Source of the DNA: Octopus bimaculoides
Lineage: Eukaryota
Length of the DNA stretch: 47,646 nucleotides
Direction: 5' to 3'
Assembly: GCF_001194135.2 (NCBI RefSeq)
Contig: NC_068994.1
Location: forward strand, 2,382,120 to 2,429,765
The notes under the pieces are model-generated. The model saw only the letters and a list, made by a program, of their open reading frames with translations, was not told the origin of the DNA and ran no database searches. This document shows, in pieces, positions 1 through 43,390 of this stretch (positions are counted from its first letter, which is position 1; each line of letters opens with the position of its first letter). A program made the translations under genes and the position numbers.

Positions 1-267
1 ATAACACTGTGTATTATGAAATGCATTAAACACAGAGATAACACAGCAGCTGCTGCAACAAAGACTACAGCATACCAAGGTAGAGCAGAGATGAAACAAT
101 TGTTGTACCAGACTAACACTTCTGTTGCTATGTCAAGGAATCCGGAAGAGATGGTGAAAAGGAATATCTATTCTGAGAGATCCAAGAGTGAATGTTATGC
201 AGAAGGTCAGCTGCGGAACAAATATGAATCTTCAGTTCAGTCAAGAACTTTACCAAAGCCTACCCAA
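1..267 (+). CDS. Protocadherin A, 3' end of the large exon (end of TM helix plus proximal cytoplasmic tail); partial, runs off the window start
   Basis: Frame from base 1 reads ITLCIMKCIKH...AEMKQLLYQTN...RNKY...TLPKPTQ. It aligns with ITLCIVRCVKH...SEMRQLLIQTN...QNKY...ILKSAQ of the PCDH at 34311. Phase-0 donor CAA|GTAAGT at 267/268. Confidence 0.88.
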
Positions 268-425
268 GTAAGTCGTAAGATATTTTACATCTGTGACTTA
301 AGTTTGAAGTAAAAAAATTAGTTGGTGTAATTGTTTATATTATTAATTTCATGTTTGTTTTTAAAAACTTAATGCTAAGAGTAAATATCCAATGCTTTTT
401 AATTTCTTTTACTTTCATTATACAG

Positions 426-588
426 AAGTACAGTCAGCCAGTTGTGGTGACTTCGAATGATGATGCTGTTGAAGTAAGTAGTCTGACATCAACATATCAA
501 ACAGGAACGCTGTCTTCCCAGCAAAATAATGAACATGGACATAGTGTAGGGAATATGAAACATTATGAAGAAATACCAGAGATGTCAG
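426..588 (+). CDS. Protocadherin A cytoplasmic-tail exon (163 nt, phase 0 to phase 1)
   Basis: Acceptor tttcattatacAG|; reads KYSQPVVVTSNDDAVE...KHYEEIPEMS; donor TCAG|GTAACT. Gapless alignment to exon 37193-37355 with 26 of 53 residues identical. Confidence 0.87.
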
Positions 589-1423
589 GTAACTAGTAAC
601 ATCAAAATCAAAATAGTTCTGATCGTTTATCTAATTAAATGTATAATTTTAAACAGCATATTAATTTTAGATTTACCATTAGTGTTAGATTCTTTTTTTA
701 CATTGCTGTTAATATTTTATAGTATTCATATGTTTATTCAAATATTAACTATTTTATTGAATTTTATAATCTATGTTTTAAAAGGATGTCAAATTAGTTG
801 AGAAGAGAATATTTTCCACTATAGAATATAGCTCCTCTATTAATATATGAAGATAATAATGTTGGGAATTTTAAGTCTCTGCATCAATACCATGCCAACG
901 TCTGACCCAAATCTTAATTTTTGTTATCCTCACACTGGTATTGAACTGTGCCTCTGGTAAAGAAGCTTAACTCTCAACTGTCATTTGAAGAGATAGTTCT
1001 AGAGTGTTTCTTGTTGTATAATGCTCAGAATCTACCATAGTTCAAAGAAAGGCAATGGGGGAAACAGCTCCAGTAAAACAGGACACATTCCATGTTCTCC
1101 TAACAAAACAATGCTTTACTGGATATTATTTAAAATAATTGATTAAAAAGGATTAAGCTTTGGGCAACTGAATAATTTTAGAATATTTATCATTAAGAAA
1201 ATAATAAGAAACAAAAACTATTATCTGCTGATAATTAACATTTTAAATTTTATATTAATATTTTGTATTTAGTGTACTGAAATTATATTTATGTTAGGAG
1301 ATCAATATTTTTAATGAATTTATTTTCCATTCTTATAACTTCTCTACAAATTGATTACAATTTGTGCTATTGAACCAATTCTGTTTATTGGTTACTATTG
1401 AATATTTCTCATTTACATTTCAG

Positions 1424-1503
1424 GAAACAATATCTACAAAAACAATGAAGATTGTACATTGAAAAAAGATGAAAACCAGGAAACCTATCTAAAACATGCA
1501 TAA
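1424..1503 (+). CDS. Probable terminal coding exon of protocadherin A
   Basis: Acceptor tcatttacatttcAG|; in phase 1 it continues the tail as GNNIYKNNEDCTLKKDENQETYLKHA-stop (TAA 1501-1503). A similar acceptor context (tacatttcAG|G) follows the paralogous exon at 6686. Confidence 0.5.
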
Positions 1504-1758
1504 CATATAATAGTTTATCTTCTATCTGTCTTAGGGAGGCAAACATTATTTGTAACATTCTTAAACTGATGTCGTTAAGTTTTATTTTCTTAATTATCTT
1601 CACAAATAGCTTTCATTAGACATTCTGAGACATGACAACTAGATTTTTTTAAGATAGGCAACTTTAGTGTCCTTAAAAACCTCTCTGCCATAAAGACTAC
1701 ATGTCAGAATTTGATGGTTAATTTTATTTTCCATTAAATACAACACTGTATGTGTACG

Positions 1759-1812
<54 letters not shown>

Positions 1813-2216
1813 CTTAGCTATATGTGTGTACATATACATATAAATCAATCCAAGGAAAAAACAATTTCCTTCAATGGGATGGAAAACATCCAAATTTCAC
1901 TGGTTCTTTAGTTAAATACCACAAGATAGTAGAGAAAAAAATCTATATTAAAGGAAATAGAGAAATACGATTGACATATTAAAAATTTATTAATATTATG
2001 ATATAATATAATTATAATATAAAAAGATATAATATAATATAACAAATAATTAAAACAAATGTCTCCCCCAGGGAATTTATAAAGATTCACTTTTAAGCAT
2101 ATGAGTCTCTTGAGGGTAGTATTTGTCTAAAAAAAGACAAAAATTTCATGCAAGGACTGCGAAATTATAATAAAATAGACTTAATACATTACCTGTATTT
2201 ATTTTATACACTTCAG

Positions 2217-2354
2217 GAAAATGAAAGACAAAATCCACCCTGGGATTTGAACTTAGAACAAGAAGAGACCAAAATAAATCCCAAAAGTCATTTAGTTCAG
2301 TACTCAACTGTTTATGTTGCTCCAATAAAGCCAATTTTTTTGTTGTGTGATTAA
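2217..2354 (+). CDS. Candidate alternative terminal exon (phase 0)
   Basis: Acceptor attttatacacttcAG|; open in phase 0 as ENERQNPPWDLNLEQEETKINPKSH...CD-stop, which is compatible with the donor at 267. No homology support. Confidence 0.25.
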   Translation, partial: ENERQNPPWDLNLEQEETKINPKSHLVQYSTVYVAPIKPIFLLCD

Positions 2355-2639
2355 TTCGAGATCACTGGCAAATTTTATTGCTATTATTTAGTTAGAGTTA
2401 TGAAATACATGAGAGTTACATTTTGATAGCAAATATTTAATTTTACACGAAACATAGGATATAAGAGACCTTTGATGATATTTTATTTCCTTCAAAATTT
2501 GCTTTCCTCTCTAAACAAAGTCAGTTTAAAATTCCATTATCTTACATTTAAATTCTCTGTACTTCACTTTGTTTTCTACAAGCTACTTAACATTTATACT
2601 GATAGATGAAGAAAAGCAAGAGCATATGATTCAAGGGGT

Positions 2640-2641
<2 letters not shown>

Positions 2642-2687
<46 letters not shown>

Positions 2688-2736
2688 TTCTCTCTCTCTC
2701 TATCTCTCTCTCTTTCTCTCTCTCTCACACACACAC
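2642..2736. repeat. (CT)n/(CA)n microsatellite
   Basis: Directly visible. Confidence 0.95.
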
Positions 2737-2763
2737 ATTCAACCAAATGAAATGTTGTAGCAG

Positions 2764-2884
2764 GCTCCTCTCTGGTTGATCATCGTAAAGCTGTTGTTAC
2801 AGCAGCAGAGATCTAGCAGCAACAGCAATTGTTACAATGAACTGGTTTATTTCAAGTGGCAGTGTCAATCATAACACAAAACAT
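2764..2884 (+). other. Candidate 5' (leader) exon
   Basis: GC-richer island after a CT tract; ends in a strong donor CAT|GTAAGT; contains TACAGCAGCAG, shared with the islands at 11076 and 26132; ATG at 2837 is in phase 0 with the donor. Confidence 0.3.
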
Positions 2885-3037
2885 GTAAGTTTATTTACAT
2901 CTTTCAAGTGTTTATATTTTTCTGATAAAACATTTTCTTTGTAAATTCTGGACAAAGAAATATATAAATTGTTCCATGTTTACATAATCAGCAAATGTCC
3001 AGTATCTATATGTTGTGCAAAGTGAGAATCTTTAATT

Positions 3038-3535
3038 CATCACCATCGTCGTTGTCATTTAACGTCTGCTTTCCATGCTGGCATGGGTTGGATGGTTTGA
3101 CTGAGGACTGGTGAGCCAGAAGGCTGCACCAGGCTCAATCTGATCTGGCAAAGTTTCTACAACTGGATGCCCTTCCTAATGTCAATCACTCCAAGAGTGT
3201 AGTGGGTGCTTTTACATGCCACTAGCACAAGGGCCAGTCAGGTAGTTCTGGCAACAACCATGCTCGATAGGTGTTTTTTTTTACGTGCTACCTGCATGGA
3301 AGCCAGTCCAGTGGCACTGGCAACGACCACGCTCAAATGTTGTTTCTCACGTGCCAGTAAGGCAACAATTACGCTCGAATGGTGCTTTTTACATGCCACT
3401 GGCACGGGAGCCACTCCATGGCCCTGGCAACAATCACGCTCAGATGTGCTTTTAACGTTCCACTGGCATGAGTGCCAATCAGGTGGTACTGTCATTGGCC
3501 ACGTCAGCGATTTTGATTTCACTTGCCTCAATAGG
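3038..3535 (-). mobile_element. SINE-like repeat with (GAT)n tail and internal ~65-bp tandem units
   Basis: Same 3' sequence as copies at 28600-28770, 40722-40850, 43141-43390 and 43498-43557 (AGGAAGGGCATCCAG...CCAACCCATGCCAGCATGGAAA.CGGACGTTAAA.GATGATG). Confidence 0.85.
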
Positions 3536-4559
3536 TTAAATTATTAAATTAATTTTCTGTTGTATTTTGTCTCACACATAATGATCCTTTCTACATTTTG
3601 TTGTTGATTTTTTTTATATTTATATTTTTACAAAATATGATGCTTATGACACTATTTTAGGTTTAGAAACATTTCATTCGGTTTGAATATCATGTAATTT
3701 GTTAATTATTGTTTGTGATTTATAGAATAAACTATTTAATATAAAATATCAAGAGGTATTTTGAATATTAGCTAAGTGGCATAGACTGGGACATAAACAT
3801 TTTGAGTGGAGTCTGAAAAGTTCCAGTGACATCTTTTGATGAATTGGAAGTTTTTGCTCTCAGACATTGAATGTAAATGGCAGAATCCTGTGGCATGCAC
3901 TTGACTGAACTTAGACTAAAGAATTTCCTAAAGTCCTTGATGTAAGATTAATGACAATGAGAATATCAGATATTAGCTTTATTTATGCAAATCTAAAAGG
4001 AATTCTGTAATCATATTGTTCAAATCAAGGAACATGGAAAAAAATTGTTACCCAATTTTTAAATATGGCAAAATATTGGATTATTTACTTGCAAAATAAC
4101 AATATAAGATCTATAAATTAGAAAATTACTATTTGTAAATATTCAGTGACTAGTTGTCACTTTGAAAACTATACATTTCGAACAGGAATTTGGCAGCGGC
4201 ACCTCTAGCCAAACAATTATTCTGTGGTGCTGAAGGGAAATAACCTAGAAATCGTGATACACAGATATTGTTTTGAGCTGAGTGGGGGTGCTAGATTCCC
4301 TTGTTCAAAAATATAAGGACACAGATTGTATCGTATAGCCAGCTGGAGACGATGTCTCCTGGGTCTAAATTACAGCAACATTCATCCTAAACCAGGACTG
4401 CCATGTTATGTTGGCAAACAATCTTTACTCCAGTATAAGATCTGTTTTGGTTTACTTTTCCAGTGATATAATAAATATTTTCAAACATTACCATTGTAAA
4501 TTTCATAAAGTCATATGGTTTGCATTTTTACCTGGCAGGTGATCAGGTGGCAAGTAAGT

Positions 4560-4990
4560 TTCTTCATATTATTGTTGCAAATAGCCGAGTCATTTGCATT
4601 ACAGAACTCTCCGAGCCTTGATTTTTCTATTGTTTGGGCAATATCCAAGCTTGGAAAGACTAAAGGAAAGGCAAAAGCAATAAGCAATATCAGATATCCA
4701 TAAAAGAAGCTACTCATAAGGTTTTATGTGGCCATGGTGGAAGCTGAAAGTAAGAAGTTTGCCAAGTGTTCTTCATTTGTAAGCAAATTAATATATTTTT
4801 GAGGGAGTGTATACAAAAGGATTGCAGTACACTTGCCGTTAGCAACACTGCAAAAAGTAGAAGCATGGTGGATATGTTACTACAAGAGGTTGCTGGTAAA
4901 TTTGTGGGAGAGAGAGAGAGTAACCAGCCCAAGGGGACACAAACGAGGGAACTGCTATTCAGATAGACAGGTGTATGTACACAGTAAAGG
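4560..4990 (+). mobile_element. Degenerate RTE-type LINE C-terminal remnant
   Basis: Fragmentary translations KLLIRFYVAMVE, EGVYTKGLQ, LLVNLWE and PRGHKRGNCYSD follow the order of RTE/RTE-X post-RT motifs; frameshifted. Confidence 0.4.
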
Positions 4991-5029
4991 TATCAGCCTC
5001 ATTAACAAGGTTGCTCCCTTCCATTATTC

Positions 5030-5110
5030 TTTTCTACTCAAGGCACAAGGTCCAAAATTTTTGGAGAGGGGCCCAGTCGATTAGATCGACCCCAGTACGC
5101 AACTGGTACT
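5030..5110 (-). mobile_element. 3' fragment of a tRNA-derived SINE (family 2)
   Basis: GGCACAAGG...AGTCGATTAGATCGACCCCAGTACGCAACTGGTACT matches degenerate copies at 27560-28560 and 30370-30630. Confidence 0.7.
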
Positions 5111-5830
5111 TTTAATCTATATTCTTTGGTTGTGAAGAAACTGACTGAGTTTCCCTTCCATCTCATTTTCTTAACATCAGATATATCTGCTTCATCTCAG
5201 CTCTAGCATTTGATAGAATCCCTTCAGACCTGTCTGTCAAAGTTTTAATTGTTATTAGGAATTACTTTAATATCCTAAGCTTAATTGCATGAAGCTATTT
5301 GAAAAATATTTGATAAACTTTCAGGAAACACATCCTTAAATTGTAAATATATGCACTAGATACTAAAAAAAAATAATCTATACAATCTAGACTGAACAAA
5401 TTTTTATAGTTGTAAAATGATAATTAATACATATATCTCACATAATTTGCCAAAAATAGCTGCCGCACATCCCTCGAATAACACTCACTGCCTTTAAAAA
5501 ATTGAAGACTTATTTGAACAATATAATTCTAGATATACAAAAGGAATAGATGGTCATAATTGGAATGTTTGTTATCTTAGTTTTGCTCAATTAAGGCAAA
5601 ACAAGCTTTCTAAACAAAATATCTAAAAGCAAGATTAGTTCATATAATGTTCAAACTGATGAACCCCTATAGTCTATTTATCTAAGGAACAGTTAATGTA
5701 AACCTTTTAGCATACAGTTTTCAGTTGCTATAGAGTAAATAATCTCAAAGTTCAGCATTTACATTTCCTTTTGTATTTTTTGTGAATGTGCAATGTGTTA
5801 TATTTTAACATAGTTTTGTTTTCGTTACAG

Positions 5831-6718
5831 ATAATATTCTCAGCTACAGAACAAATATAAAGTTCAAAGCAGAACTCTTCCCAAACCTTCATTGGTAAGA
5901 ACCGTTTTTTGATAGAAACTTTTTAATTGCTACAAAATAATTTTTTTTTTTTTTTTTTTTTACAAACATATTTGACTAAAATTTTTCTCCAATTTCCTTT
6001 GATTAGAATTGTTTATTTTCCTTACTAATTATTTGCTATATTTTTAGACAGAAGTGCAGCCAACCAGTTATAGTAAACTCTAATGATGATGCTGTAGAAG
6101 ATTATTCAACTTTGCCTTCTAACGCCCCATCTGGTTCACTCTCTACTCAATAGGGCAACACCCAAGGGTGGGAAATTTCAACTTTATAAAGAAATACTCG
6201 AAATTTCAAGTAAGTAATTTAATAATCCCCTTGTAAATATCTATCATCATCATGATTGTTACACATTTCCGTTTCCATGCAGACATAGGTTGACTGGGTC
6301 TTCCATGGTTAAATACCTTTTTTAACACCAACTACTTTACAGAGTGTACAAGATGCATTTTCTCTTGGCACTAGGGAAGTTGCCATGTCTTCTACAAGAT
6401 TGAAAGGATCCCCTGGTACCTCACTTAACAGATTGCATTTTATTATGGCACCAGCACAAGAGAGGAAAAGAGTGAGAACATGATGGATAGATTGTGAGGG
6501 TGAATATTGGTTCTTACTACTGTTTAGCTATTTTCAAATAACATCATGTATTTAATATGAAATGCAAAATTTCCAATATTTTTTTTTTATGTTTTGTTAT
6601 TTTATAACTTGAACTATTCAGACTTTGTATTTCAATAAAATTTTAATTTGATTTGAAATTTACAACATTTCATTGGTACATTTCAGGGACTGAAATATAC
6701 ATTAAGCAGCAGCCTTGA
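5831..6718 (+). pseudogene. Collapsed protocadherin remnant C (mini-exon 5831-5894, tail exon 6052-6209, possible last exon from 6687)
   Basis: 5844-5894 encodes LQNKYKVQSRTLPKPSL, close to gene A LRNKYESSVQSRTLPKPTQ, then donor GTAAGA. The intron is 157 nt versus 158 nt in gene A. 6052 onward reads KCSQPVIVNSNDDAVE, with TAG at 6151 and a frameshift before LYKEILEIS|GTAAGT. No cadherin-repeat sequence lies upstream. Confidence 0.85.
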
Positions 6719-8266
6719 ATAAGAGTCACCACCAAAAGACATCCTTGAAACATGTAGCAATCATGAAAACAATCTTCCCCCAGTCTATTAATTAACATAA
6801 TGGAAATTTTGTTGCATAATATTTGAGTGGAACTTTAATTTCAAAACCATGACAAGTCAAACAATGTAAATATTTCCTGTCTGCTACAATTTACCCATAT
6901 ACTAGGCATATCAAAGAAAAAATAGCTTTAATGATAGCTACTTTAAAAGACAAACTTTTATATCTTGAGGCTTATTGTTTTATTTTCTGTTATCTCAGTA
7001 TTCCTTTGCACTGAGTTACGTTTTCTTGAAACTGTTTTTATCTCAATAAGAACTATCGTTGAAGAGGACTCTTTACAAGCTTTCTTTTTCAAGTTTCCCC
7101 TTTGAGAAAAGGGGAAAATAAAATTATTTGTATTTATTGATATTGTGACATTAATTCCCCCAAGTCCCAAAAAAAAGAGAAACTATTTTGTTGGGCGTAT
7201 ACTTGTATTTGTAAATGTTTATATGTTTGTGCTCTTTTAAAAAAGAAAGCTTAACTCAAACTTCTCAAACTAAATGTTTTAATAAGCTACAAGGGTAAAT
7301 TTAGTTGTAATAAAACTTATTTTTGACATGGTTCATTAAGTTCTTGCTACTTCAGAAATATTTCTGTAAAAAAAAATAATGTTCATACATAGATAACATT
7401 AAAAAAAAATGATATTTTCTTTAGTAAAAAGTACCAGAATACAATGAAAGTATTCTTGATGCAGCAAATTTAAATATTTGTCCACCATTCACATTCTATT
7501 TGTTGAAGTTTTGTTATAAATAAGAAGGTTTTAACTGAAACAATTTTATGTACATCAGTTTGCTTGTTAAACCAAATTCACATTATAAGAATATGGTGTA
7601 TCATAATATTGTTTCCTTGTATCAGCATAAAGTTACAGATTTGTAAAGAAGTACAAATGTCTAAATTCGCCCCAGTACACACTTATATCATCAACCAGCA
7701 GAAGAATGGAAAGCAAATTTCGATCCAGTGAGATCTTGTAATGGATATAAAGGAATGTAATAAAATAACATAATATATTTAATTCAGCACCCAATACACA
7801 CACACACACACACACACACCTCCTTATATCAGAAAACACTCATTTGGTATTATTTCATAAAAACAATTTATATCTTAGTAATTACATGCCAAATACATAA
7901 TCATATTTAAAATGAATGGTCAAGAGTAAGAGAAGGTGACATGCAAATATTAGCATCAAATAACTGTTTTAAATTTCTGTTGCACCAACAAAATTGATAC
8001 AGGATAATGGAACAGTTAAGCTCATTTATTGAAAATTCCTATCGACATGAATATATATCTTGAGGTAAGTTTAATTTCATCTTTCTATTAACTATACATG
8101 GATAAATATATTCTTTAAAATATTTTATCTGTATCTTGTTATAAATGTCTTAATATCATTTCTGAGTCATATATATTTATTTGTTTTATGTTCACACTGA
8201 TAAAGAGTGAGGTTGAGATTTTGATGTTATTTGAATTTATTATCTGCTTATGAATTATTGCATCAT

Positions 8267-11039: not shown

Positions 11040-11200
11040 AAGCTGAAGTATCAGGAACGCAGTAACAAACATAAATACAGCAGCAGGCAGACAGCCGTGC
11101 TATATTGACATAAATACATTGTGACACACTACTATAACAGTACAACTGAGTAGTCACACAAAGCAGTACAATTAGATTTTTCAATCCTCTTCTTCTAACC
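11040..11200 (+). promoter_or_regulatory. Candidate promoter/leader island paralogous to 26040-26218
   Basis: ACATAAATACATTGTGACACACTACTA (11108-11134) resembles ACATAAAATCATTGTCACACTACTA (26109-26133); both islands carry TACAGCAGCAG. Confidence 0.3.
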
Positions 11201-11800
11201 AGGTGGAATTAATTTTGTCACAAAAGTGCGCATTTTGTCATAATTCATTTTATTTATGTTATCTATATATGTATATATATCAGTGGGAAACATTTTGTGT
11301 GTGTGTGTGTGCACATCTGATTAGGATAGGGGTATTTTTTTTTAAGTGGTGGTAGTGTTTTTTTTGTTTTTTTTTCTTCTATAGAAAGCAAGAAGCTTTA
11401 AGCAACTGGGAAGGGAAATGAATGGAGTGTACTTTATATTGATAGAGCTGAGAGGTGGGAGGATAACAAGTGTCAGCTGTATTGTGTTGAATACAAAGCA
11501 GCGAAATCTTTATTGTTCTCTTGTATTTGCTGCCTTGCATTTTCACCATAAGAAAAATTCTTTAATGATCAATATGGAATTACTTATTACACATATAATT
11601 TTATTTAATATTTAGCATTCTTATTTTATTTCCCTCTGATTATAAAAAGATGTTTTGTTCAAAGTATTTTTTATGATAATTAAAGGTTTAATGTGAATTA
11701 TACATTTAGAGTAAAATGTAACAGAAATATACTTAATGTTACTTCATATTTTCAGTAGGCTAACAATAAATCCTTTGATAATTCAGTAGCCAAGATAAAC

Positions 11801-12131
11801 ATTGAAAGTGTACAGTTCTATATTTAAGAGATGAGGAATTATGTACATTAGACGGATATTTGTCCTCATCTTGCCCACGGGCATATGGCATAGGGGTTAA
11901 GAGCGTGGGCTACTAACCCCAAGATTCCGAGTTTGATTCCAGGCAGTGACCTGAATAATAATAATAATAATAATAGCATCGAAAAATGCCTTAGGAATGA
12001 GAACCCAGGTTCAAAAATTCCCCAAGACACCTGATGAAGGTTGGAGGGTATATCAGCCGAAAGGTTGTTAACAACAAACAAGATGAGAACAAATATCTGT
12101 CAAATAATGTAAATAATGTATTGAAAGTGTA
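11801..12131 (+). mobile_element. tRNA-headed SINE (family 3) with hammerhead-like 3' domain, inverted 3'-end copy at its 5' side and a 12-bp TSD
   Basis: TSD ATTGAAAGTGTA at 11801-11812 and 12120-12131; inverted terminus 11810-11873; A box TGGCATAGGGG at 11886 and B box GAGTTTGATTCC at 11919; (AAT)n spacer; tail of GTAAATAAT units. Confidence 0.88.
12027..12070 (+). ncRNA. Degenerate minimal type I hammerhead ribozyme motif
   Basis: acac-CTGATGA-a-ggttg(gagggtatat)cagcc-GAAA-ggtt. The core boxes are intact but stem III and the 3' strand of stem I are mutated. Confidence 0.55.
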
Positions 12132-13257
12132 ATTAGCTGTATTTATAATTGTGTCAGTAAATAGTGTTTAAGGCTTTGTTCATTCAGTTCTAAAAAAAAA
12201 AAACATATCAAGATTGAAAATGGTAAAAGCGAAAAAGAAAACTATTTAACTCAAACAATGTTTTAAATTGTTTTGATCTTTGTTGACTGTGAGAATTATA
12301 AATACCCTGTGATTTCAAAATCTCCCTTGTAATGTTGTTTTAAAAGCAACAAAGCTGTTGTATAAATATGTTATTTTTGTTCCAATAAATGAATTTTATT
12401 TGAAAGTTACTGTAAATGAAATTCAATGAATAAAAATAAAATGTATTAAATACGTAATTACATAAATAGAAAATAAACATAGATACAGAAAGTAAATTTT
12501 TTAAAGTTATTGTAATTATTTTTTACACTTAAATCTAAAAAAAATGAAAGTTACTATTTCTTAAAATGTTGGCTCCAATAGTTTTATTATTTATGCCATG
12601 GTCAGTAATAATGCTGTTGAACACAGTGGACAGGTCTGCCTTGATATCAATTTCAGTTGCAAGAAAGTTGTTTGAAAATCCATAACAGTAAAATTTTGGC
12701 ATTAAAATCACTTTCACTGATAAGGACCGTAATGATTAACAGCAATGATGTAAAACTACAGCTTACCGAAAATATGTATGATTATATGTGTAAGCAAAAC
12801 ATCCATAACTGTACTCAGTCAGGGCTAACCTTGAACTAGTAACAATAATTCAAGAATATTAATGACTAGTATTGTTTTTTGAAGTGTATTATATGTAAAA
12901 GTGATTCAACTGAAAGAAAGAAAAAATGCCTCCATTCTATTCTAAAACAGAAATGAACCAATTGTTTTACAAGACATGATACAGTCAATATATCAATATA
13001 TCAAAGAAAGTTGAAATTTTCACTCTAAATTGTCTGGATACCAACAAATATTGAACCTTCTTTCAAAGAAAAATACATCTCCTAATTATTACAGGTGAAT
13101 AATTTTGTGTCCATTTTATATAAATCTATGTGCATGCCATGTATGTATGCATGTTCTTGACAGAGTTTGAATAAATGTAATATTTATAGAGTGTTTTTAG
13201 CTCTGCCTACTCCTTTTACAACTTCCATATTTATGAGCAGCAGTGTCATAAATCCAC

Positions 13258-13397: not shown

Positions 13398-14489
13398 TAA
13401 ACAATTATTGTAGACACCATCACTAACTATTATTACCACTGTGAGGGATCTTCTTTGGAGTTGCTCTACAAGCTAGAAATAGTCTCCAGGTCTTTCAGAA
13501 AAGATCAGATGATCACAGCTAGAATGCTTCTGATCACACCTTTGCTCAGATAGAGTTGAACTGGGAGTAAATGACAGCAGCCATAAAGACCAATACTGTT
13601 ATAGACCCCAGTATCTATAATATGTTGTATTTCATTTTTCTTGTGACTGGTTTAATTTACTGTGTAACCCATAGCTGACTAAATAAAAGACACGTTGAAC
13701 AGAGCTGAGCTCTTTTCAAAATAACTTTATTAAAAGAACAAAAAGGAAAAGAACTTTCTATTTTGCAGAGTAATCATTGATTTTTACTGTCATTCTAAAC
13801 AGACACTCATGTAATCAATAAAGCAAACAAAGATAATAAAAGCAGTGCCTACTTTTTTGGTGGTTGGATATGTGCACAAAAATTTGAAAAGGAAACAAAT
13901 AAAAGGAACGGATCATTAGAACTGAATGAAAATATTATACAAGCATGAGAGCAGATATAATCTAAGTAAAGTCTAATCTGAAATAAGGGTTAAGATTCAG
14001 AAATGAGTAAATTAAAGAAAGTGTGCTAAACATATAATGTGTAAGAAAATTAATTATTATAAAGATAACAAAGTTATATAAATATATTCTGAAGGTGTAA
14101 TTGACAAATATAAAATATTTTAACATTTAATTTTTGATTAAGCATAATGAATATCTTAATGTTATAAAACTACTTTTTCTGCAATAAGTCTGTAGTTTGC
14201 TTACTACACTTTTTTTTCCGAAACTGGAGGATGTTCGGAGAAATGGAACCTGTTCTCAGCTTAACTTTTACTACATCTCGATGGATAGCAAAACTTTCTA
14301 ATCAATTATGTCTAGACCTGCTGCTTTATAGTAATAATAATGAGCAATCAATTCTATCAAAACTTAAATTTGTTAACATCCACTTTTTGTTATATCTATA
14401 ATAAATCGCTTATTATTAGCATAATATATATGTATAAGTTCACAAAACATTCTTAATTCACACAAGTTCTCATAACATCTATAATTTGG

Positions 14490-14780
14490 CAAAAAATTGT
14501 TACATTCTCCATTTATTTCTTAAAATACTGTTTTCTACGAAGTGTCAAGAAGTTTCATTGCACTTTAGCAACCTGGTCACTGACATACTTAGTGTCAGTG
14601 ACCAGATTGCAGAGGTATTATAAAACTTCTTGACCCTTCATTGTAGACAGTATTATTAAGAAATGAATATAACAGATTTTGTGTTCTTAAAAGGTTAAAA
14701 ATTACTCTTCCACTATGTGACTGTTTCAGTTTCACCACACAATCTCAGATTGAATCTTGTGAAGCAAGTAAAACTCCAAA
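14490..14780 (-). mobile_element. Degenerate family-4 element forming a ~190-bp imperfect palindrome
   Basis: CTGGTCACTGACA (14573-14585) and TGTCAGTGACCAG (14593-14605) with further paired arms outward; 14700-14780 resembles 8437-8508. Confidence 0.55.
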
Positions 14781-17399
14781 ATCTATAATTTAAATGTCAT
14801 AAAGTGGCACATTGTTAATCTGCATGTCACTCAATGAAGGAATTACTATTATATATGATTTGTTTCTTAGCATGTGATAAAATCATAGTATATTTTAATT
14901 CCGTTTAGTACATGTTTGAACTGAGATAATTGCTACCCCACACTTTTTTTTATATGATTTCAGAACATGTTTCCTACCCAAGAGAGTCAAAGGTCTTGAT
15001 GGAATTGACAATATTTACTCCAAAGAATTCCAATTACACAGTAAACTGTGGTAAATTTATGTTTCAAATATATTAAATGTATTTTCAAATGTTTGATTCA
15101 CTTTATAAAAATCAGTAAATCTTTTAAACAACATGTAAAGCTTTGTTATGAAGGACTCTGGAGAAAATGTTCAATACACAATGAAAGTAGAAAATTCATT
15201 TGGTAAAGATGGATAGACAACATCGGATTAAAAGGTTTCAGTATTAATGAAAATTATAGTTCTGTTAAATAACACTTTCATATCAGACACATGTTAAAAA
15301 GGAATGATGAAGGCTAATATATGATCTTAAAAAACCTAAACCAGTGGAATACCCAGACTTCATAACTTTGGCATGTTATATGATACACATGCCAAAGCTC
15401 CTTTTAAAGCTAGTAATGGAATGGTATAAACATTAGAGGAAGAGATATCAATAAACCTCTGAAATTTGTAAATGAAAATATTTATGACTGGGGAAAGTTA
15501 CATAATTATTAATTTTAAATACACTAATGGTAAAGGCAAAATATTTCATCAAGAAAAGAAAATGCAAATACTGGTATATCTAAGAATATGGAGAGAAGTA
15601 ACATCAATGTGACCAACATAGCACTTGGGTTAGAATAAATTTGTAATCAATTCATTAAACAAAAACGAGAATTCAAAATACTCTTGATACTTTACATTAA
15701 ATGAAAAAGAAACGGACTTAAAGACTGCTACATCTGACTAGTTTTTTGTAAGGTTTTTAAACCCCTTTTTACGTAATAAAGATTTGGTAAACCATTGAAT
15801 TATTTGGAGTTGAGTATTCAGGTAACTGAGTTGTATAAAATGAGAGAAAAATGGAATGCATTTCAAATGTTGAGATCTAAAGCAGTTCATATTTATATAA
15901 CTTCAAAGGAAATACAGCTCTTTTAGATTATCAGAGGAGAGTGTTCCATAATGAAAATTATTTCAAAAGGAAAGAAATAGAGTAACAAAAAAAAAAAAGA
16001 AGCAAAGACTGATATACATATATGAAAGAACAAGAATTAGGTCAGAATGCCAATAAAATGTAACACAATTATAAAAACTACAACAGAGAGAAGTGATAAG
16101 TTGCTTCGAGCTGACCTCTGGTGCAGATGATACTCAACTGATTGATTGAACATATCTTCCTCCAGCAATGATTTGTGTTACATGAGATAAAAGCCAAGTA
16201 ATGGTAGTCTACTCTGATTTTTTTTTGTCTGCTTTACAAAATTCATCCAGTGAAATACAAGCTCTTGAACATTATTTGCTCTACTATATCTAATTTATTT
16301 TGGAATATGCAATTCCCAGAAAAATTTGAAGCTTTCAGTTATTGACTAAATAGAATGCTTAAATTTTCAATAACAGACACAAAACAGTAAAACTAAGTGA
16401 AATTCTAGTTTTTGTTTTCATGTGTGATGCTTCATGTTATAAATAAAACAATGGATTAATGTCCATGATAACTTGGCAATTTTATATACCAGTCCATTTG
16501 TATTTCAGAGAAAAATTTGTTTATGAACACTCAATATTTAACAATGAAAAAGAATTCCAACTTGGATAATCATTCATAAATTTTATTTACTTTATATTAA
16601 TTGACATTCTTATGTTTTTGCTGGAGTTTTTTTTTTTCCTAAACAATAAACATATTTTCTGTAAAACTTCTAAATTTTTTTTGATATGTTTACTGCAATA
16701 GGAAATACATTCAACTTATTGCTAATCAAATGTAGCCGACATTGAATGTTGTGTTTTTTTTTCTTTTCTTTTATAAGGATTCAAAGTAATTTAAATGTAT
16801 TAGCTCAATTTATATATTCACATTTTTAAATCTTATTTTATACAGATTCTGCTTATGATGGGTTTTTTTTCTTTTTTTTCAAATGATCTCTTGCCTGAAA
16901 TTTGAGATTCACTCAAATAATTCTTAAGCTACTATCATTCATTTATATTTAAATATTTTCATATCAAATTTACTTAATCAAGACTCGAACACTGTAAAAA
17001 TATTGCACTGGATATAGTCTGTAATGTTCAGTTGAATTATAATAGTGTGACATAAAAAAAAAGACCATAATTATGTATTAGTCAGGTTTTCATGTGTCCT
17101 AATATGAACAGCAAGATATTACCTGTGGTGTCTTTCCTATTTAATTCTTTTGTAATAAAATACAAATTAAAGTTAACTGTGTTTTATTTTTCCTAATGAA
17201 ATTACAATCAAGCATGAATTATTGTTGTGAAAATTTCCAGAATCTAAGCGTATTACTATTTATGTAAGTCTGAGCAAAACAAATGCTTGTCAACCAAGGA
17301 AAAATTGTTGATCAGATAGAGAACGTGAATGGCTTTCCTATCTTGTCTCCATTAATTGATGAAAGTGTTGCAGACATTGGCGCTGTGAGTAAAGCCAGA

Positions 17400-20287: not shown

Positions 20288-21173
20288 AACACATTTAAGT
20301 TTGAATATATAAGTACGCAGTTATTCCTGTGCAATAGGTTTTGCTGAAAATAAAGTGATCTGCTGCTACTCTCATACTTTCTCTAACTACAATATTCAAT
20401 CGTCAATACCACATCGTCACCATCATCACTATCTTGATGTCTGCTTTTACCATGCTGGCATAAGTTGTATGGGTTTGAGAATAGATTCCCTAGAAGTAAC
20501 TACCTTAGCAGAATGCTCTGAAACTACTACAAATGAAAATTTTTGCATTGGGTGGGTAGAGAGCGAGTTTCTTGCATAGTCTCTCTTCCTACAAAAGCAA
20601 AAATACACTGCTGCTGCTGCTTATGATGATGATGATGGTGGCGGCGATGATGGTGATGATGAGGAGGAGGAGGAGGAGGAAAAATATTGATATAAATGTT
20701 AGTAATTATATTCAAGATTTGAAATCTTAACGTTTGCCAAGTGGAAAGCTATCATCATATTGCTGTGAAAATTCTCAATGAATCTAAAGTGTCTCGTGAC
20801 TGCAACTACAGAACACTTTTCACTGCCACACTGCATCAATGAACGTACACACGCCTGTCCTTGAAAATCATTATTACACTTTGTTGTAGCTGACTACCTT
20901 AGTAGCCAGCTCTCAACTGCTGCAGCTTACAGTGATGATGGTTGTGGGAGACACATGTCCGTAGTCTCTCTCCCTCCCCCCTCTCTAAATGCTAAGCATA
21001 TCTCTCTCTTGCTTGGTTAGTTGATATATTTATTTTTGTAGTAGTTTGTTTCTCTCACTCCATCACGCACATGTTCATACACACACACACATTCATAGAT
21101 CACAAACCAGTGTATCTTCCCCAGCTTGCTTATATAGTTTATATATATATATATATGTATAAGTATGTATATG

Positions 21174-21211
<38 letters not shown>

Positions 21212-21485
21212 TGCACACACAGTGAGGCAAAGAAGAAAACAAACACTGAGAGAGCTTTCAGCTGTCTCCTAATGAACATAAATAGTAGTCATATGCTGTC
21301 AGCTGAACTTGATCTAGGCTTCATTAAGCATGAAATATGCTTCGATTTCTGACATCCACGGTCTCTCTCTCTCTCTCTCTCTTTCACTTACCATTCACAC
21401 TGATTCTAGAATAAACCATTGTCATTTTCAATATCTTAGCAAATAATGGAATATATAATTTCTATCTGCAGTTCACAGAACAAAG

Positions 21486-21487
<2 letters not shown>

Positions 21488-21563
<76 letters not shown>

Positions 21564-21639
21564 TCTATGCAGATTTGTAAGTGTAGATGTGTGTATGCAT
21601 GTATGCAAATGTAAATGTGCATGTGTAGGTGTATAAATA

Positions 21640-21679
<40 letters not shown>

Positions 21680-21990
21680 TCAGTAAATAGTGGGGTTAGG
21701 TGTATAAATATATATGTATATACACTGCATATATATAATATGCATGTGTATCTATATAATATCTTTATATATATATGCTTGTATACAAACATACATATAT
21801 GTGTGTTGTGTATGTATAGATGTTTATTATGTATTTATGTGTGTGTGTGTACACATATATGTATGAATATGTATGTATATATGTGTGTGTGTATATATAT
21901 ATATATACATGTATGTATACTTATAAATATATATATCTATATACATATGCATATATAATATATACTTATATGTATGTGTCTGTGTGTGTG
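21488..21990. repeat. (TA)n tract (21488-21555) and complex TA/TG low-complexity block
   Basis: Directly visible; explains the spurious Y/I/C/M-rich ORFs on both strands. Confidence 0.95.
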
Positions 21991-22004
21991 CGCGTACGTG
22001 TGAA

Positions 22005-22744
22005 ATGTCATGTGATTCTACCGGCAATGTTTGCGTAATACACTGAAGATCTTGTACATGATATGAAAGTATTGCAGTTGGTGAAAACGATGAGTATCAT
22101 GTCCATGATCATGAAGCACCAACTTGAATGGTTTGGTAATCTTCTTCACTTAGAGGAGACATGCAACTCAAAACTGGTGCCGTATAGCGAGTTGCAGCAG
22201 GGAAAACACCCTTAGTGCAAGCCACGCAAGTATATCAACAACAACCTTAAAGATACACTTAAAACGATCAATATTGATGCTAGCACCTGGGAAAATCTTG
22301 CATCAGGTGGAGTATTGTGAAGGAATCTGATTGCTTGGTGTTAATCGATGCAAGAACAACAATGTTGCATACACTGAGTTGAAATGTAATGGTGAATATA
22401 TGGGGGATGTGAACCCTCTCCCTCAGAAGGATACAAAAGAGTCTCTTTCATGAGACAAGTGTGGTCATGCCTGGTACTTAAAGGTAGGTATACTCAGCCA
22501 TAAGCGTAATCATAGAAACAACACCATCCCACCATTCATTCAGCAAGATCTCTCACACAACTTCTGTAATAAAATGTGTAGGTCAGCCAGTGGACTCACT
22601 CAGCATTACAAATCCCAACATTTGAATAATCAGGCTGCTACTGCTGAGAAACTGACTTGTAATCAATGTCAAATGACTTGCAAGTCCCTCGCAGGTTTTA
22701 AGAGCCATATGAGACGTCAGCAGCAAGAGGAAAACCAAATGTAA
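22005..22744 (+). mobile_element. RTE (BovB-like) LINE 3' remnant ending in three C2H2-like zinc fingers
   Basis: Degenerate [40 protein letters not shown]. Then one frame from 22451-22744 with xDKCGHAWYLKVGILSHKRNH, HNFCNKMCRSASGLTQHYKSQH and CNQCQMTCKSLAGFKSHMRRQ. Confidence 0.8.
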
Positions 22745-22843
22745 AGTGTTTCATAGAATGAAATGAGTTTAAGATGTGGTCTTACTCAGTCGCAATTCAA
22801 CTTCCACTATCTAAATATATATATATTTATATATATATATATA

Positions 22844-23226
22844 GGCGCAGGAGTGGCTATGTGGTAAGTAGCTTGCCTACCAACCACATGGTTCCGGGTT
22901 CAGTCCCACAGCATGGCACCTTGTGCAAGTGTCTTCTACTATAGCCTCAGGCCGACCAAAGCCTTGTGAGTGGATTTGGTCGACGGAAACTGAAAATAGC
23001 CCGTCGTATATATGTATATATATATATATGTATGTGTGTTTGTCCCCCACACCATCGCTTGACAACTGATGCTAGTGTGTTTACGTCCCCATAACCTAGC
23101 GGTTTGGCAAAAAGAGACTGATAGAATAAGTACTAGGCTTACAAAGAGTAAGTCCTGGGGTTGATTTTCTCGACTAAAGGCGGTGCTCCAGCATGGCCAC
23201 AGTCAAATGACTGAAACAAGTAAGAG
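22844..23226 (+). mobile_element. Full-length tRNA-derived SINE (family 1)
   Basis: Head GGCGCAGGAGTGGCTATGTGGTAAG...GGTTCAGTCCC (A/B-box-like); several copies in the window. Confidence 0.93.
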
Positions 23227-23370
23227 TATATATGTGTGTGTGTGTGTAAATATTAAGTATATGATTTAACTTATTAAACACAGTTCAACAAAGGATGAAC
23301 TCGCATTCAACCCTTTAAATATATATATACATATAAAAGTATATATAATATATAAACTTATATATATATA

Positions 23371-23556
23371 TATTCTTTTTATTCTTTTTATTCTTTTACT
23401 TGTTTCAGTCATTTGACTGTGGCCATCCTGGAGCACTGCCTTTAGTCAAACAAATCAACCCCCGGACTTATTCTTTGTGAACCTAGTACTCATTCTATCG
23501 GGTCTTTTACTGAACTGCTAAGTTATGGGGACATAAACACACCAACACCAGTTGTC
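23371..23556 (-). mobile_element. SINE family 1, 3' half, inverted relative to 22844-23226
   Basis: Reverse complement of 23065-23226 plus a TAAAAAGAA-type tail. Confidence 0.9.
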
Positions 23557-32750: not shown

Positions 32751-34310
32751 CATCATCATCATTTAACATCCATTTTTCCTGCCACTATGCCACACACATT
32801 TACCACACTTTGGTTATAACAACAAAACCACAAATTTGGTGGCAAAGCAGAGCCAAATAAATATTATGATTGTAGTGATTGCGATAGGAGAGATTCATGC
32901 TTAGAAATTCAAAGAAAAAACTCAGCAACTTTTAAGTCTTATAGAGAATAAATGTTTTTATAAAATGCAAATATAATATATCTTTAAAATTAGTTTTACA
33001 CATAGAATAGGGTTTGGTATGAATAATAGCATACATCTTCCCAATCAAGCAGAAACATCCAGGGCTTAGATTATGAAATCCTTTCAAGAATTTTAAATCA
33101 TACACGCTTTTTAATGAAGTTGTTTGTTGGCATTTGTATACTGATGACTTTGAATCTCAATGTGTTGTATTCAGAAAAGCATATTTCTATTGCTAATTTA
33201 TGTTATAAGAGAGGTGAATGGCAGTATTGATAGAGAATTAAATAAAATGCCATACAATATTTAGTTACATCCTACTATGGTCTGAGATTAAATCCCACCA
33301 GGTCCGACTCTGCTTTCATTCTTTTGGGCCCTGTAAAATAAGTACTAATTAAATACCTAAATTGACTTTATCAACTATTTTCAACCTTGTGTTATATAAG
33401 AAATCATTATTAAATTAAGAACAAGTTAAAGCACTAATTATCAACAATGCAGCAATTAATTAGCTGCTTATTGTTCCAAGATGTTTTCAGTAGTAGAAAA
33501 TCATTAATAAAAAATGTTGTAAGAATTTTGAGAAATAAGGCGTAAATTTTGTTTTGTTTTTTAATTTGACTTTTGAAACATGTCAGCTGACAAGAATGAT
33601 TTCTTAACAAATGAACACAAATTGTTAACAGATTGTCATTCCAGACTTTTTTAAAAAGTGAAAAACCTTAAAAAAAAATGATCTGGATCTTAAAATCTTT
33701 ATCTTGAACATTTCCTTTCTAAAGTCCTTTTAAATCCTAAATAATTCACAGATGCGTGTCTTAATGAACCACATCTACCATTATAAATTCAGGATAAATG
33801 CTATCTGTCAAGAAATAATTATGAGAATGAATTGTAGATTAAAGTCTATTTATAGTAGAAATATAAGATTGTTTAGAATAATAACATAATGTCTCACTTC
33901 TCTCCTTTTCTGCAGAAATTTGTTTATGATGAAGCAAAGAAGATAAATGGGCTTTAATCACACAGCTTTCTGGAGAGCATACCTGTGTAGATGAAGTGGA
34001 TTTATTTGAGCTAGGAATTATAGTTTCCCAAAAACTTTCTTTCTCTATAAAACTGAACTGATTTTTACTCTTATTTTTCTTTTTTCTACTTAAATAAGCT
34101 GATTATTTTCATTATTTACGACTGAAAATATTAACTATTTGTTTTAATTTGCTTTTTAATCTTCATTGATTTATTGATTATTATTAAATATAAATTGTAA
34201 ACAAAATTTGTTTGAATACATTTTGATATTGTTTCTGTTTGTTTTCTGTTTTAGAAATTATTGCAACCAAAACCCAATATCTTCAATCAAAAGCAGTACT
34301 AAGCAGAAAT

Positions 34311-37192: not shown

Positions 37193-37354
37193 AAATACAG
37201 TGAACCAGTAGTCGCAACATCTAATGATGATGCTATGGAACACAACACTGATGTTCCTGATTATACTTTGGAGACACTACCAGCTCAAAGAGATGGAAGA
37301 CACAAATTACGTGAAGGAGGAGGGAGACATTATGAAGAAATTCCAAGTATGTAA
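37193..37354 (+). CDS. Protocadherin B cytoplasmic-tail exon
   Basis: Acceptor tttttcttatAG|; KYSEPVVATSNDDAME...RHYEEIPSM-stop, then G|GTAAAA at 37355/37356. Same 163-nt length as 426-588. Total predicted protein is 842 aa. Confidence 0.88.
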   Translation, partial: KYSEPVVATSNDDAMEHNTDVPDYTLETLPAQRDGRHKLREGGGRHYEEIPSM

Positions 37355-42374: not shown

Positions 42375-42480
42375 NNNNNNNNNNNNNNNNNNNNNNNNNN
42401 NNNNNNNNNNNNNNNNNNNNNNNNNNNNNNNNNNNNNNNNNNNNNNNNNNNNNNNNNNNNNNNNNNNNNNNNNNNNNNNN
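42375..42480. other. Assembly gap (106 N) inside a TA tract
   Basis: N run. Confidence 1.
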
Positions 42481-42850: not shown

Positions 42851-43140
42851 GGAAGTGCTGTGTATTCCACCCACATGTAACATTAAATTTCTCACACATC
42901 TTATCCCAATAATCCAAACTGCATCTCTTCTCCTCTTCCTCACATTTCCTCTTTTTCATGCCTCTGTTTATCCCTCCCTCCCCATTCAGACTAATCCTGC
43001 CCTGTCAGCTGTATCAGGGATTGTTGCATATGTGAATAAACATTCAAAAATTAGGGAATGGAGGAGATAAAATCTAGACTACATATGTTTCTTAGCTAGT
43101 GGAACCTTCGAAGAAGTAAATTATTCAAACGAGGGAATAT

Positions 43141-43390
43141 ATATCATCATCATCATCATCGTTTAACGTCCGTTTTCCATGCTGGCATGGGTTGGATGGT
43201 TCGACTGGGGTCTGAGAAGCTAGGAGGCTGCACCAGGCTCCAATCTGATCTGGCAGTGTTTCTACAGCTGGATGCCCTTCCTAATGCCAACTGCTCCAAG
43301 ATTGTAGTAGGTACTTTTAACATGCCACCAGCACAGGGGCCAGAGAGGGCTGGCATCGACCACATTTGGATGGTGCTTTTACATGCCAGG
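43141..43390 (-). mobile_element. (GAT)-tail SINE-like repeat
   Basis: Matches 3038-3300. Confidence 0.88.

What the first reader, a model, noticed from the sequence alone, without database searches (positions are those of the whole stretch)
5831..5894. A protocadherin whose ectodomain exon appears collapsed to 64 bp with both splice sites kept
Seen: the acceptor TTGTTTTC-GTTACAG|ATAATATT resembles the acceptor that opens gene B's large exon (TTGTTTTCTGTTTTAG|AAATTATT, 34254/34255). After only ~13 nt the sequence is already the last 17 codons of a large exon (LQNKYKVQSRTLPKPSL|GTAAGA), followed by a 157-nt intron (158 nt in gene A) and the tail exon. Inference: an internal deletion removed ~2.3 kb (signal peptide, EC1-6, TM) and left a splice-competent skeleton gene. 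This would be a distinct mode of gene death or recycling in the cephalopod PCDH array.
Basis: partly seen in the sequence, partly recalled or inferred. Interest (0 to 1): 0.75.

Follow-up and report, generated by a model that had tools for sequence, protein, structure and literature searches.

The report
Deleted-out octopus protocadherin pseudogene relic

Summary
Window 5831-5894 is a 64-nt exon remnant with an AG acceptor and a GT donor. A 157-nt intron and a decayed tail exon (6052-6209) follow.

The window is Octopus bimaculoides chromosome CM046614.1. The orthologous loci of O. vulgaris and O. sinensis align at about 91% on both sides of window 5840-5842. At that point they carry an extra 2,339 bp and 2,331 bp, which is the rest of a protocadherin large exon: remaining 5'UTR, signal peptide, EC1-6, TM and most of the cytoplasmic part. 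The junction is clean, with a 3-nt TCA microhomology.

The acceptor looks genuine. All 15 large exons examined have a pyrimidine tract plus AG 48-57 nt upstream of the start codon, and two gene models splice exactly into it.

The gene was very probably dead before the deletion:
- The tail-exon TAG is shared with O. vulgaris.
- The O. vulgaris and O. sinensis copy has ATG>ATA, frameshifts and stops.
- Its 5' third is far more decayed than the species divergence allows.

The deletion is therefore post-mortem erosion, not a new mode of gene death. No evidence of use was found. Read-level confirmation of the short-read assembly was not possible.

The parts
5815..5830 (+). Pyrimidine tract plus AG: the retained 3' splice site of the ancestral large exon. 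A branch-point-like TTAAC lies at 5805-5809 (inference only).
   Evidence: 15 of 16 nt are identical to O. vulgaris L002 19900-19915. The same element lies 48-57 nt upstream of the (ex-)start codon in all 15 large exons examined. Models P0001 and P0122 splice into the equivalent site of other genes. Similarity to gene B's acceptor is reached by 3 of 5,428 AG sites.
5831..5842 (+). First 12 nt of the ancestral large exon, from its 5'UTR part (ATAATATTCTCA). This is the left side of the deletion.
   Evidence: 12 of 12 nt are identical to L002 19917-19928 and L003 104295-104306. In those species the exon continues ATTTGATCC... to an ex-start codon 38 nt further on.
5840..5842 (+). Deletion junction: the 3-nt microhomology TCA, present at both breakpoints in the undeleted orthologues.
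   Evidence: Left homology ends at window 5842 = L002 19928. Right homology starts at window 5840 = L002 22265. There are no filler bases. The missing stretch is 2,339 bp against O. vulgaris and 2,331 bp against O. sinensis.
5843..5894 (+). Last 52 nt of the ancestral large exon (..LQNKYKVQSRTLPKPSL). The GT donor follows at 5895-5896.
   Evidence: 48 of 52 nt are identical to L002 22268-22319. It is homologous to gene A 210-267 with a 6-nt indel.
5895..6051 (+). Retained phase-0 intron, 157 nt.
   Evidence: Its length matches gene A's 158-nt intron. It is 86% identical to O. vulgaris.
6052..6209 (+). Decayed tail exon (KCSQPVIVNSNDDAVEDYSTLPSNAPSGSLSTQ*). It has an in-frame TAG at 6151-6153, a further 1-nt deletion specific to O. 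bimaculoides near 6156, and the HYEEIP motif degraded to LYKEILEIS and out of frame. A GT donor is retained at 6210-6211.
   Evidence: Translation and alignment. The TAG and the Pro>Leu change in the motif are shared with O. vulgaris. Best protein match is P0004 residues 791-835 at 52%.

Best explanation
The region is the relic of a tandem-duplicated, non-processed protocadherin pseudogene, here called psiC. It lies between gene A and gene B on O. bimaculoides chromosome CM046614.1, and the junction is at about 2,387,959-2,387,961.

In the common ancestor of O. bimaculoides and the O. vulgaris/O. sinensis pair, psiC had the normal family structure. That structure is an acceptor, a ~2.4-kb large exon (5'UTR, signal peptide, EC1-6, TM, cytoplasmic part), a ~157-nt intron and a tail exon. 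The copy was already disabled at that stage.

In the O. bimaculoides lineage a single deletion of about 2.34 kb joined position +12 of the large exon to a point 52 nt before its end. The junction shows a 3-nt TCA microhomology and no filler. This is the signature expected of end joining or replication slippage. What remains is a 64-nt mini-exon flanked by the original acceptor and donor, plus the intron and the decayed tail exon.

Shown here: the deletion, its exact breakpoints, the orthology, the authenticity of the acceptor as a family feature, and the disabling lesions.

Inferred: the repair mechanism, the order 'death first, deletion later', and that the relic is now inert. That both splice sites survived is most simply a coincidence of where the breakpoints fell.
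For: Identity of the window:
- Gene B equals XP_014781381.1 (P0002) at 100% over 842 aa.
- The position on CM046614.1 comes.

Orthology and the deletion:
- Window 5107-5842 matches L002 19185-19928 at 91.4%. Window 5840-6471 matches L002 22265-22900 at 91.0%.
- The same is seen in O. sinensis: 103574-104306 and 106635-107248.
- Both flanks are single-copy in these loci.
- The extra O. vulgaris segment translates as a PCDH ectodomain, TM and cytoplasmic part.
- The junction is resolved base by base.

Acceptor:
- It is positionally conserved in 15 large exons.
- It is used by two models from different annotations.

Prior death:
- The tail-exon TAG is shared.
- O. vulgaris and O. sinensis have ATG>ATA.
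- At least 3 frame changes and several stops occur in the large exon.
- The first ~750 nt are 57-65% identical to gene A, with many frame-breaking indels.
- That part is at best 38-53% identical in amino acids to any of 121 PCDHs.

No constraint: the relic is 92-93% identical between species, against 92.7% and 95.8% for its flanks.

Not an assembly gap: no Ns occur in window 1-42374.

Context: four other length differences of about 0.3-0.8 kb lie in the same 7 kb.
Against: - The O. bimaculoides assembly is Illumina shotgun plus HiC (PMC9068888). It is visibly gap-ridden inside PCDH exons elsewhere. I could not inspect reads across the junction.
- The outgroup labelled Argonauta hians has no detectable psiC at the syntenic position. 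Polarity therefore rests on the content of the segment, not on an outgroup.
- Only one disabling lesion, the TAG, is strictly shown to predate the species split. The large-exon lesions are seen only in the sister lineage.
- Absence of transcription or splicing was not tested.
Confidence: 0.85

Rival explanations
1. Assembly artefact. The O. bimaculoides genome really contains the full psiC exon, and the short-read assembly dropped it through a collapse or a false gap closure.
For: The assembly is the 2015 Illumina shotgun assembly plus HiC. PCDH exons elsewhere in it are interrupted by N gaps that create false truncated gene models. In O. vulgaris about 1 kb of the missing segment is 99.3% identical to gene A, which is hard to assemble from short reads. 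O. bimaculoides is the shorter genome at all five large length differences in this 7 kb.
Against: There is no N within 36 kb of the junction. The two breakpoints share only TCA, so no repeat exists to collapse on. The left breakpoint lies in unique sequence. About 1.2 kb of the missing segment is a divergent 5' part with no close paralogue, and an assembler would not lose that.
Confidence: 0.05
2. The deletion itself killed a gene that was still functional.
For: The large-exon lesions in O. vulgaris and O. sinensis could in principle have arisen after the split. A protocadherin lacking its last ~20 residues might still have worked.
Against: The TAG and the degraded EEIP motif are shared across species. 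The 5' third of the sister-lineage copy is 57-65% identical in nucleotides, and at best 38-53% in amino acids, to every paralogue, with several frameshifts. That is far more decay than the ~8% species divergence can supply. O. sinensis has no protein-coding model at this position.
Confidence: 0.06
3. Recycled exons. The 64-nt mini-exon and the tail exon are spliced into transcripts that read through from gene A or run towards downstream genes. They would act as UTR or poison exons.
For: All four splice sites are retained. In this array, gene models splice a tail-exon donor into the next large-exon acceptor (P0001, P0122). A comparable O. vulgaris relic (L001 16089-16802) is exonised in a 199-aa model.
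Against: No protein in the 5.8-billion-sequence database contains the relic peptide. There is no sequence constraint above the flanks. With ~8% divergence, survival of eight splice-site bases is expected by chance about half the time. The supporting gene models may be prediction artefacts.
Confidence: 0.1
4. A 5'-truncated partial duplication that never had an ectodomain, or an insertion in the O. vulgaris lineage (reverse polarity).
For: Within the window alone, only the 3' end is present and no other PCDH coding fragment lies upstream. The outgroup lacks psiC.
Against: The 5' flank, the acceptor and the first 12 exon nt are orthologous to the start of a full-length exon in two species. The extra segment is exactly the missing exon body, in register with both retained ends. 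Its 5' third is old psiC-specific sequence that could not have been re-inserted from a paralogue.
Confidence: 0.02

Closest known systems
Its own orthologue: psiC of O. vulgaris (L002 19917-22641, 411-aa model at 21078-23449) and of O. sinensis (L003 104295-~107000)
   Same: Same genomic position between the orthologues of gene A and gene B. Same acceptor, exon end, intron and tail exon, and the same TAG in the tail exon.
   Different: These copies keep the 2.33-2.34-kb exon body, although it is disabled (ATA start, frameshifts, stops). About 1 kb of it was recently homogenised with gene A to 99.3% identity.
Fragmentary protocadherin reading frames in coleoid PCDH arrays (Albertin et al. 2022, PMC9068888)
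   Same: Pseudogene-like PCDH fragments interspersed in tandem arrays of full gene duplicates.
   Different: Those fragments were reported in general terms, mainly for squid. Here the event is resolved to the base, with orthologues and breakpoints.
Pseudogenes in vertebrate clustered protocadherin loci, e.g. 14 psi-variable exons 'at various stages of degeneration' in the anole (PMC2764143)
   Same: Birth-and-death turnover of tandem PCDH units, with dead units left in place and eroding.
   Different: Vertebrate units are single variable exons spliced to shared constant exons. Octopus units are whole multi-exon genes, so a relic can keep its own acceptor, donor, intron and tail exon.
O. vulgaris relic L001 16089-16802 (part of model P0001)
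   Same: An internally deleted PCDH large exon that still has its donor, intron and tail exon.
   Different: It retains 126 nt of EC5 fused to 242 nt of cytoplasmic sequence. It starts at a different, non-family acceptor, and it is included in an annotated 199-aa protein model.

Membership tests
Functional octopus clustered protocadherin gene | Uninterrupted ~2.4-kb exon encoding signal peptide, six cadherin repeats and a transmembrane segment | tested here: not met
   Only 64 nt remain. tblastn with 121 PCDHs finds no cadherin-coding sequence between window 620 and 6049.
Functional octopus clustered protocadherin gene | 3' splice site 48-57 nt upstream of the start codon of the large exon | tested here: met
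   Present at 5815-5830. It is orthologous to the site in L002 and L003 and matches the pattern of 15 large exons.
Functional octopus clustered protocadherin gene | Large-exon end (..NKY..RTLPKP..) plus GT donor, a ~157-nt phase-0 intron, and a tail exon K(Y/C)SQPV..SNDDA | tested here: met
Functional octopus clustered protocadherin gene | Open reading frame through the tail exon to the conserved HYEEIP motif | tested here: not met
   TAG at 6151-6153. The motif is degraded and out of frame.
Non-processed (duplicated) pseudogene | Keeps the intron and flanks of the parental gene structure and lies in tandem with paralogues | tested here: met
   The 157-nt intron is retained. The relic lies 5.2 kb downstream of gene A.
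Non-processed (duplicated) pseudogene | Disabling lesions relative to functional paralogues | tested here: met
   A 2.34-kb deletion, a nonsense codon and a frameshift.
Non-processed (duplicated) pseudogene | No functional transcript or protein | not testable with these tools
   The only evidence is indirect. No database protein contains the peptide, and there is no constraint above the flanks.
Microhomology-associated deletion (end joining or replication slippage) | Clean junction without filler DNA, with a short microhomology present at both breakpoints in the undeleted state | tested here: met
   TCA lies at L002 19926-19928 and 22265-22267, and at L003 104304-104306 and 106635-106637. One copy remains in the window at 5840-5842.
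Microhomology-associated deletion (end joining or replication slippage) | Polarity: the long form is ancestral | tested here: inconclusive
   Structure argues strongly for a deletion, because the segment is the exon body in register with both retained ends. The available outgroup lacks the locus.
Processed pseudogene (retrocopy) | No intron, a poly(A) tail, and a dispersed location | tested here: not met
   The intron is retained and the position is syntenic and tandem.
Assembly collapse or misjoin | N gap or flanking direct repeats at the junction | tested here: not met
   The nearest N run is at 42375. Only 3 nt are shared between the breakpoints.
Assembly collapse or misjoin | Lack of reads spanning the junction | not testable with these tools
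   No read data are available. A look-up of a junction-spanning ORF found no independent contig.

The most novel reading that the evidence does not exclude
The relic is not inert. In this array, tail-exon donors appear to be spliced to the acceptor of the next large exon, as in models P0001 and P0122. The 64-nt mini-exon and the tail exon of the relic would then be included in read-through transcripts between gene A and downstream genes. They would serve as regulatory UTR or poison exons, making the relic a dead gene kept as a splicing 'stepping stone'.
Probability: 0.08. Interest if true: 0.5.

Novelty: new member of a known kind. Interest (0 to 1): 0.2.

Why it matters
This is a cleanly resolved example of how units of the octopus protocadherin array decay. 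An old pseudogene was partly refreshed by gene conversion in one lineage and almost wholly removed by a single microhomology deletion in another. That adds base-level detail to the birth-and-death picture of cephalopod PCDH expansion.

It also warns annotators that such relics keep usable splice sites and can be drawn into chimeric gene models.

It does not change the understanding of protocadherin function. It does not reveal a new mechanism of gene loss.

Tried and rejected
Searches and look-ups that gave nothing:
- A protein search with the 52-aa relic peptide found nothing.
The same protein was then recovered as P0002.
- Exact look-ups of P0125 (the O. bimaculoides gene A fragment) and of a 46-aa ORF spanning the junction found no independent contigs. 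No second assembly could therefore be checked.
- The outgroup locus L007 is the positional orthologue of gene A in the assembly labelled Argonauta hians. It holds no psiC remnant between the gene A orthologue and the conserved downstream block, so it does not date the event.
- L006, around the gene B orthologue, does not reach far enough.
- Rfam and Tandem Repeats Finder found nothing in 4500-7500.
- No third-exon relic was found for psiC.
- The literature searches found no description of this locus or of PCDH exon structure beyond 'multi-exonic'.

Hypotheses rejected:
- A partial 5'-truncated duplication.
- An insertion in O. vulgaris.
- A genuine small exon in a paralogue.
- A retrocopy.
- A transposon-mediated breakpoint, because there is no repeat at either edge.

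Full report
**What is in the window.** The window is from Octopus bimaculoides.
- A large ORF at 34311-36677 spliced to a tail exon at 37193 gives an 842-aa protein. It is 100% identical to XP_014781381.1, 'protocadherin beta-15 isoform X1' (P0002).
- Its locus places window position 1 at about 2,382,120 of chromosome CM046614.1, GCA_001194135.2.
- The window opens inside the last 267 nt of another protocadherin large exon (gene A). A 158-nt intron, a tail exon (426-588) and a third coding exon (about 1424-1503) follow.

**The observation.**
- AG at 5829-5830 follows ttttgttttcgttac.
- The exon remnant is 64 nt, 5831-5894.
- The donor is TTG|GTAAGA.
- The intron is 157 nt, 5895-6051.
- The tail exon starts at 6052.

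Homology to gene A starts at 5840 and runs through the exon end, the intron (length conserved, sequence weakly) and the tail exon. The resemblance to gene B's acceptor is 18 of 24 positions. Only 3 of 5,428 AG sites in the window reach that score, two of them being B and this site. Generic acceptor-like sites occur at 3.1 per kb, so that statistic alone would not carry the claim.

**The decisive comparison.**
- Gene A's C-terminus is 95% identical to O. vulgaris P0004. The locus of P0004 (L002, OX597827.1) is collinear with window 1-7218 at 84-93% identity.
- Window 5107-5842 aligns to L002 19185-19928 at 91.4%. Window 5840-6471 aligns to L002 22265-22900 at 91.0%. O. vulgaris therefore has 2,339 bp that the window lacks.
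- O. sinensis (L003, CM016872.1) shows the same, with 2,331 bp.
- Both flanks are single-copy in these loci.
- The extra segment translates as the rest of a protocadherin large exon. It holds 38 nt of 5'UTR, an ex-start codon, the signal peptide, the cadherin repeats, the transmembrane segment and the cytoplasmic part. It stops 17-18 codons before the exon end.
- Base by base, the left homology ends with ...GATAATATTCTCA and the right homology begins TCAGCTACAG.... One TCA is shared and there are no filler bases.

**Is the acceptor real?** I located 15 large exons: gene B, two in L001, two in L002 and ten in L003. In every one a pyrimidine tract ending in YAG lies 48-57 nt upstream of the start codon or ex-start codon. 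Two gene models from different annotation efforts splice exactly into that site.
- O. vulgaris P0001 ends ...EEIPGVS|DFMFSILRHF*. This is the tail-exon donor joined to the first bases after the AG of the next gene.
- The 5,410-aa O. sinensis model P0122 reads ...EEIPGVS|GSIFTILGRLYLVATHSFK|MFLSL....

The AG at 5829-5830 is therefore the family's acceptor, retained by descent. Whether it is still used was not testable.

**Was the gene alive when the deletion happened?** Probably not.
- The tail exon has an in-frame TAG at 6151-6153 that O. vulgaris shares. The invariant HYEEIP motif is degraded in both species, to LYKEILEIS and LHREILKIS. O. bimaculoides has an additional 1-nt deletion.
- In O. 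vulgaris and O. sinensis the start codon is ATA. The reading frame changes at least three times, with several stops.
- The first ~750 nt are only 57-65% identical to gene A, with many frame-breaking indels.
- That part is at best 38-53% identical in amino acids to any of 121 octopod protocadherins. Intact paralogues are 55-85% identical to one another.

This decay far exceeds the ~8% divergence between the species. The copy was therefore an old pseudogene. The middle of the O. vulgaris copy (L002 ~21130-22180) is 99.3% identical to gene A. That is a recent gene-conversion tract, and the pseudogene there is a mosaic.

**Is the relic under constraint or in use?**
- Identity between O. bimaculoides and O. 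vulgaris is 92-93% for the mini-exon and tail exon and 86% for the intron. The flanks are 92.7% and 95.8%. There is no signal of selection, although the power of this test is low.
- No protein in the database contains the relic's peptide.
- The interval holds no Rfam family or tandem repeat.

**Could it be an assembly artefact?** The O. bimaculoides assembly is short-read shotgun plus HiC (PMC9068888). About 80 kb away, truncated PCDH models are produced by N gaps inside exons. At this site, however, three points argue against an artefact.
- There is no N in window 1-42374.
- The breakpoints share only 3 nt.
- The left breakpoint and about 1.2 kb of the missing sequence are unique rather than repetitive.

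I rate an artefact at about 5%. Reads were not available, and a look-up of a junction-spanning ORF found no independent contig.

**Polarity and dating.** The segment present in O. vulgaris and O. sinensis is exactly the exon body, in register with both retained ends. Its 5' third is old, psiC-specific sequence. An insertion is therefore not credible. The assembly labelled Argonauta hians has positional orthologues of gene A (P0012, L007) and of gene B (P0003, L006) about 33 kb apart. It has no psiC remnant between them. It therefore neither dates the deletion nor shows when psiC arose.

**Context.**
- The same 7-kb interval has four other length differences of about 0.3-0.8 kb between the species.
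- Other relics occur nearby: window 12550-12800, L001 16089-16802, and L002 2699-3746 with L003 ~87936.
- Pseudogene-like PCDH fragments in coleoid arrays have been noted before (PMC9068888).

**Verdict.** The observation and the deletion inference are confirmed. The object is a pseudogene relic produced by post-mortem erosion. It is ordinary in kind but unusually well resolved. The claims of a distinct mode of gene death or of recycling are not supported by anything found here.

Noticed in passing
L003 38254, 50121 and others; L001 16802>27222; window 34239-34254: Every large exon starts at an acceptor 48-57 nt upstream of its ATG. Annotated models (P0122, 5,410 aa, O. sinensis; P0001, O. vulgaris) splice the upstream gene's tail-exon or third-exon donor into it. 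Either consecutive octopus PCDH genes are linked by read-through splicing, or the annotators are chaining genes artefactually. The true 5' exon of these genes was not identified.
   Followed up: partly
L002 21130-22180 vs L002 ~11160-12230: The O. vulgaris pseudogene psiC is 99.3% identical to the neighbouring intact gene A orthologue over about 1 kb, while its 5' third is 57-65% identical. This is a recent gene-conversion tract involving a pseudogene. The direction is unknown.
   Followed up: partly
window 12550-12800 (+): A heavily decayed cadherin-repeat (EC4-like) fragment with stops, hit weakly by 24 PCDH queries (best E=1.7e-4). It is a second, older PCDH relic between genes A and B.
   Followed up: partly
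L001 16089-16802 (O. vulgaris): Another internally deleted PCDH exon. A 126-nt EC5 piece is fused directly to 242 nt of cytoplasmic sequence, with the donor, intron and tail exon intact. It is annotated as part of a 199-aa 'protocadherin beta-2-like' protein.
   Followed up: partly
L002 2699-3746; L003 ~87936-88105: A further PCDH fragment lies upstream of the gene A orthologue. Residues 607-763 are 98% identical to P0004. They are preceded by a diverged EC piece, and no exon end or tail exon follows.
   Followed up: no
L005 11281 onward, also ~4750-5650 and ~13600-15300 (O. bimaculoides, 80 kb downstream of gene B): Truncated or chimeric PCDH models (646 aa; 1,102-aa 'protocadherin-11 Y-linked') coincide with stretches lying inside or next to large exons. 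N was read directly from 11281 onward. The two other stretches are inferred to be N runs from long stop-free ORFs on both strands. These models look like assembly artefacts, not real collapsed genes.
   Followed up: yes
window 1424-1503: Gene A's third coding exon (GNNIYKNNEDCTLKKDENQETYLKHA*) is 99% identical to O. vulgaris and O. sinensis. The surrounding sequence is 90-93% identical. This exon is unusually conserved.
   Followed up: no
window 1-16 and upstream: No full-length O. bimaculoides orthologue of P0004 is in the protein database. The only O. bimaculoides member of its cluster is a 164-aa fragment (P0125) that starts at window 16. Gene A may be cut by a gap or truncated just upstream of the window.
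   Followed up: no
window 2326, 4503, 5107-5111, 6471-6512: O. bimaculoides is shorter than O. vulgaris and O. sinensis at four further sites, by roughly 0.3-0.8 kb each. The two largest extra segments matched nothing else in the loci fetched.
   Followed up: partly
window 42375-42480 and 44426-44601: Runs of N (assembly gaps).
   Followed up: yes
window 3037-3504, 6236-6300, 43136-43388: Copies of a dispersed repeat also abundant in the O. vulgaris and O. sinensis loci. One copy begins just after the relic's tail exon and is shared with O. vulgaris.
   Followed up: no
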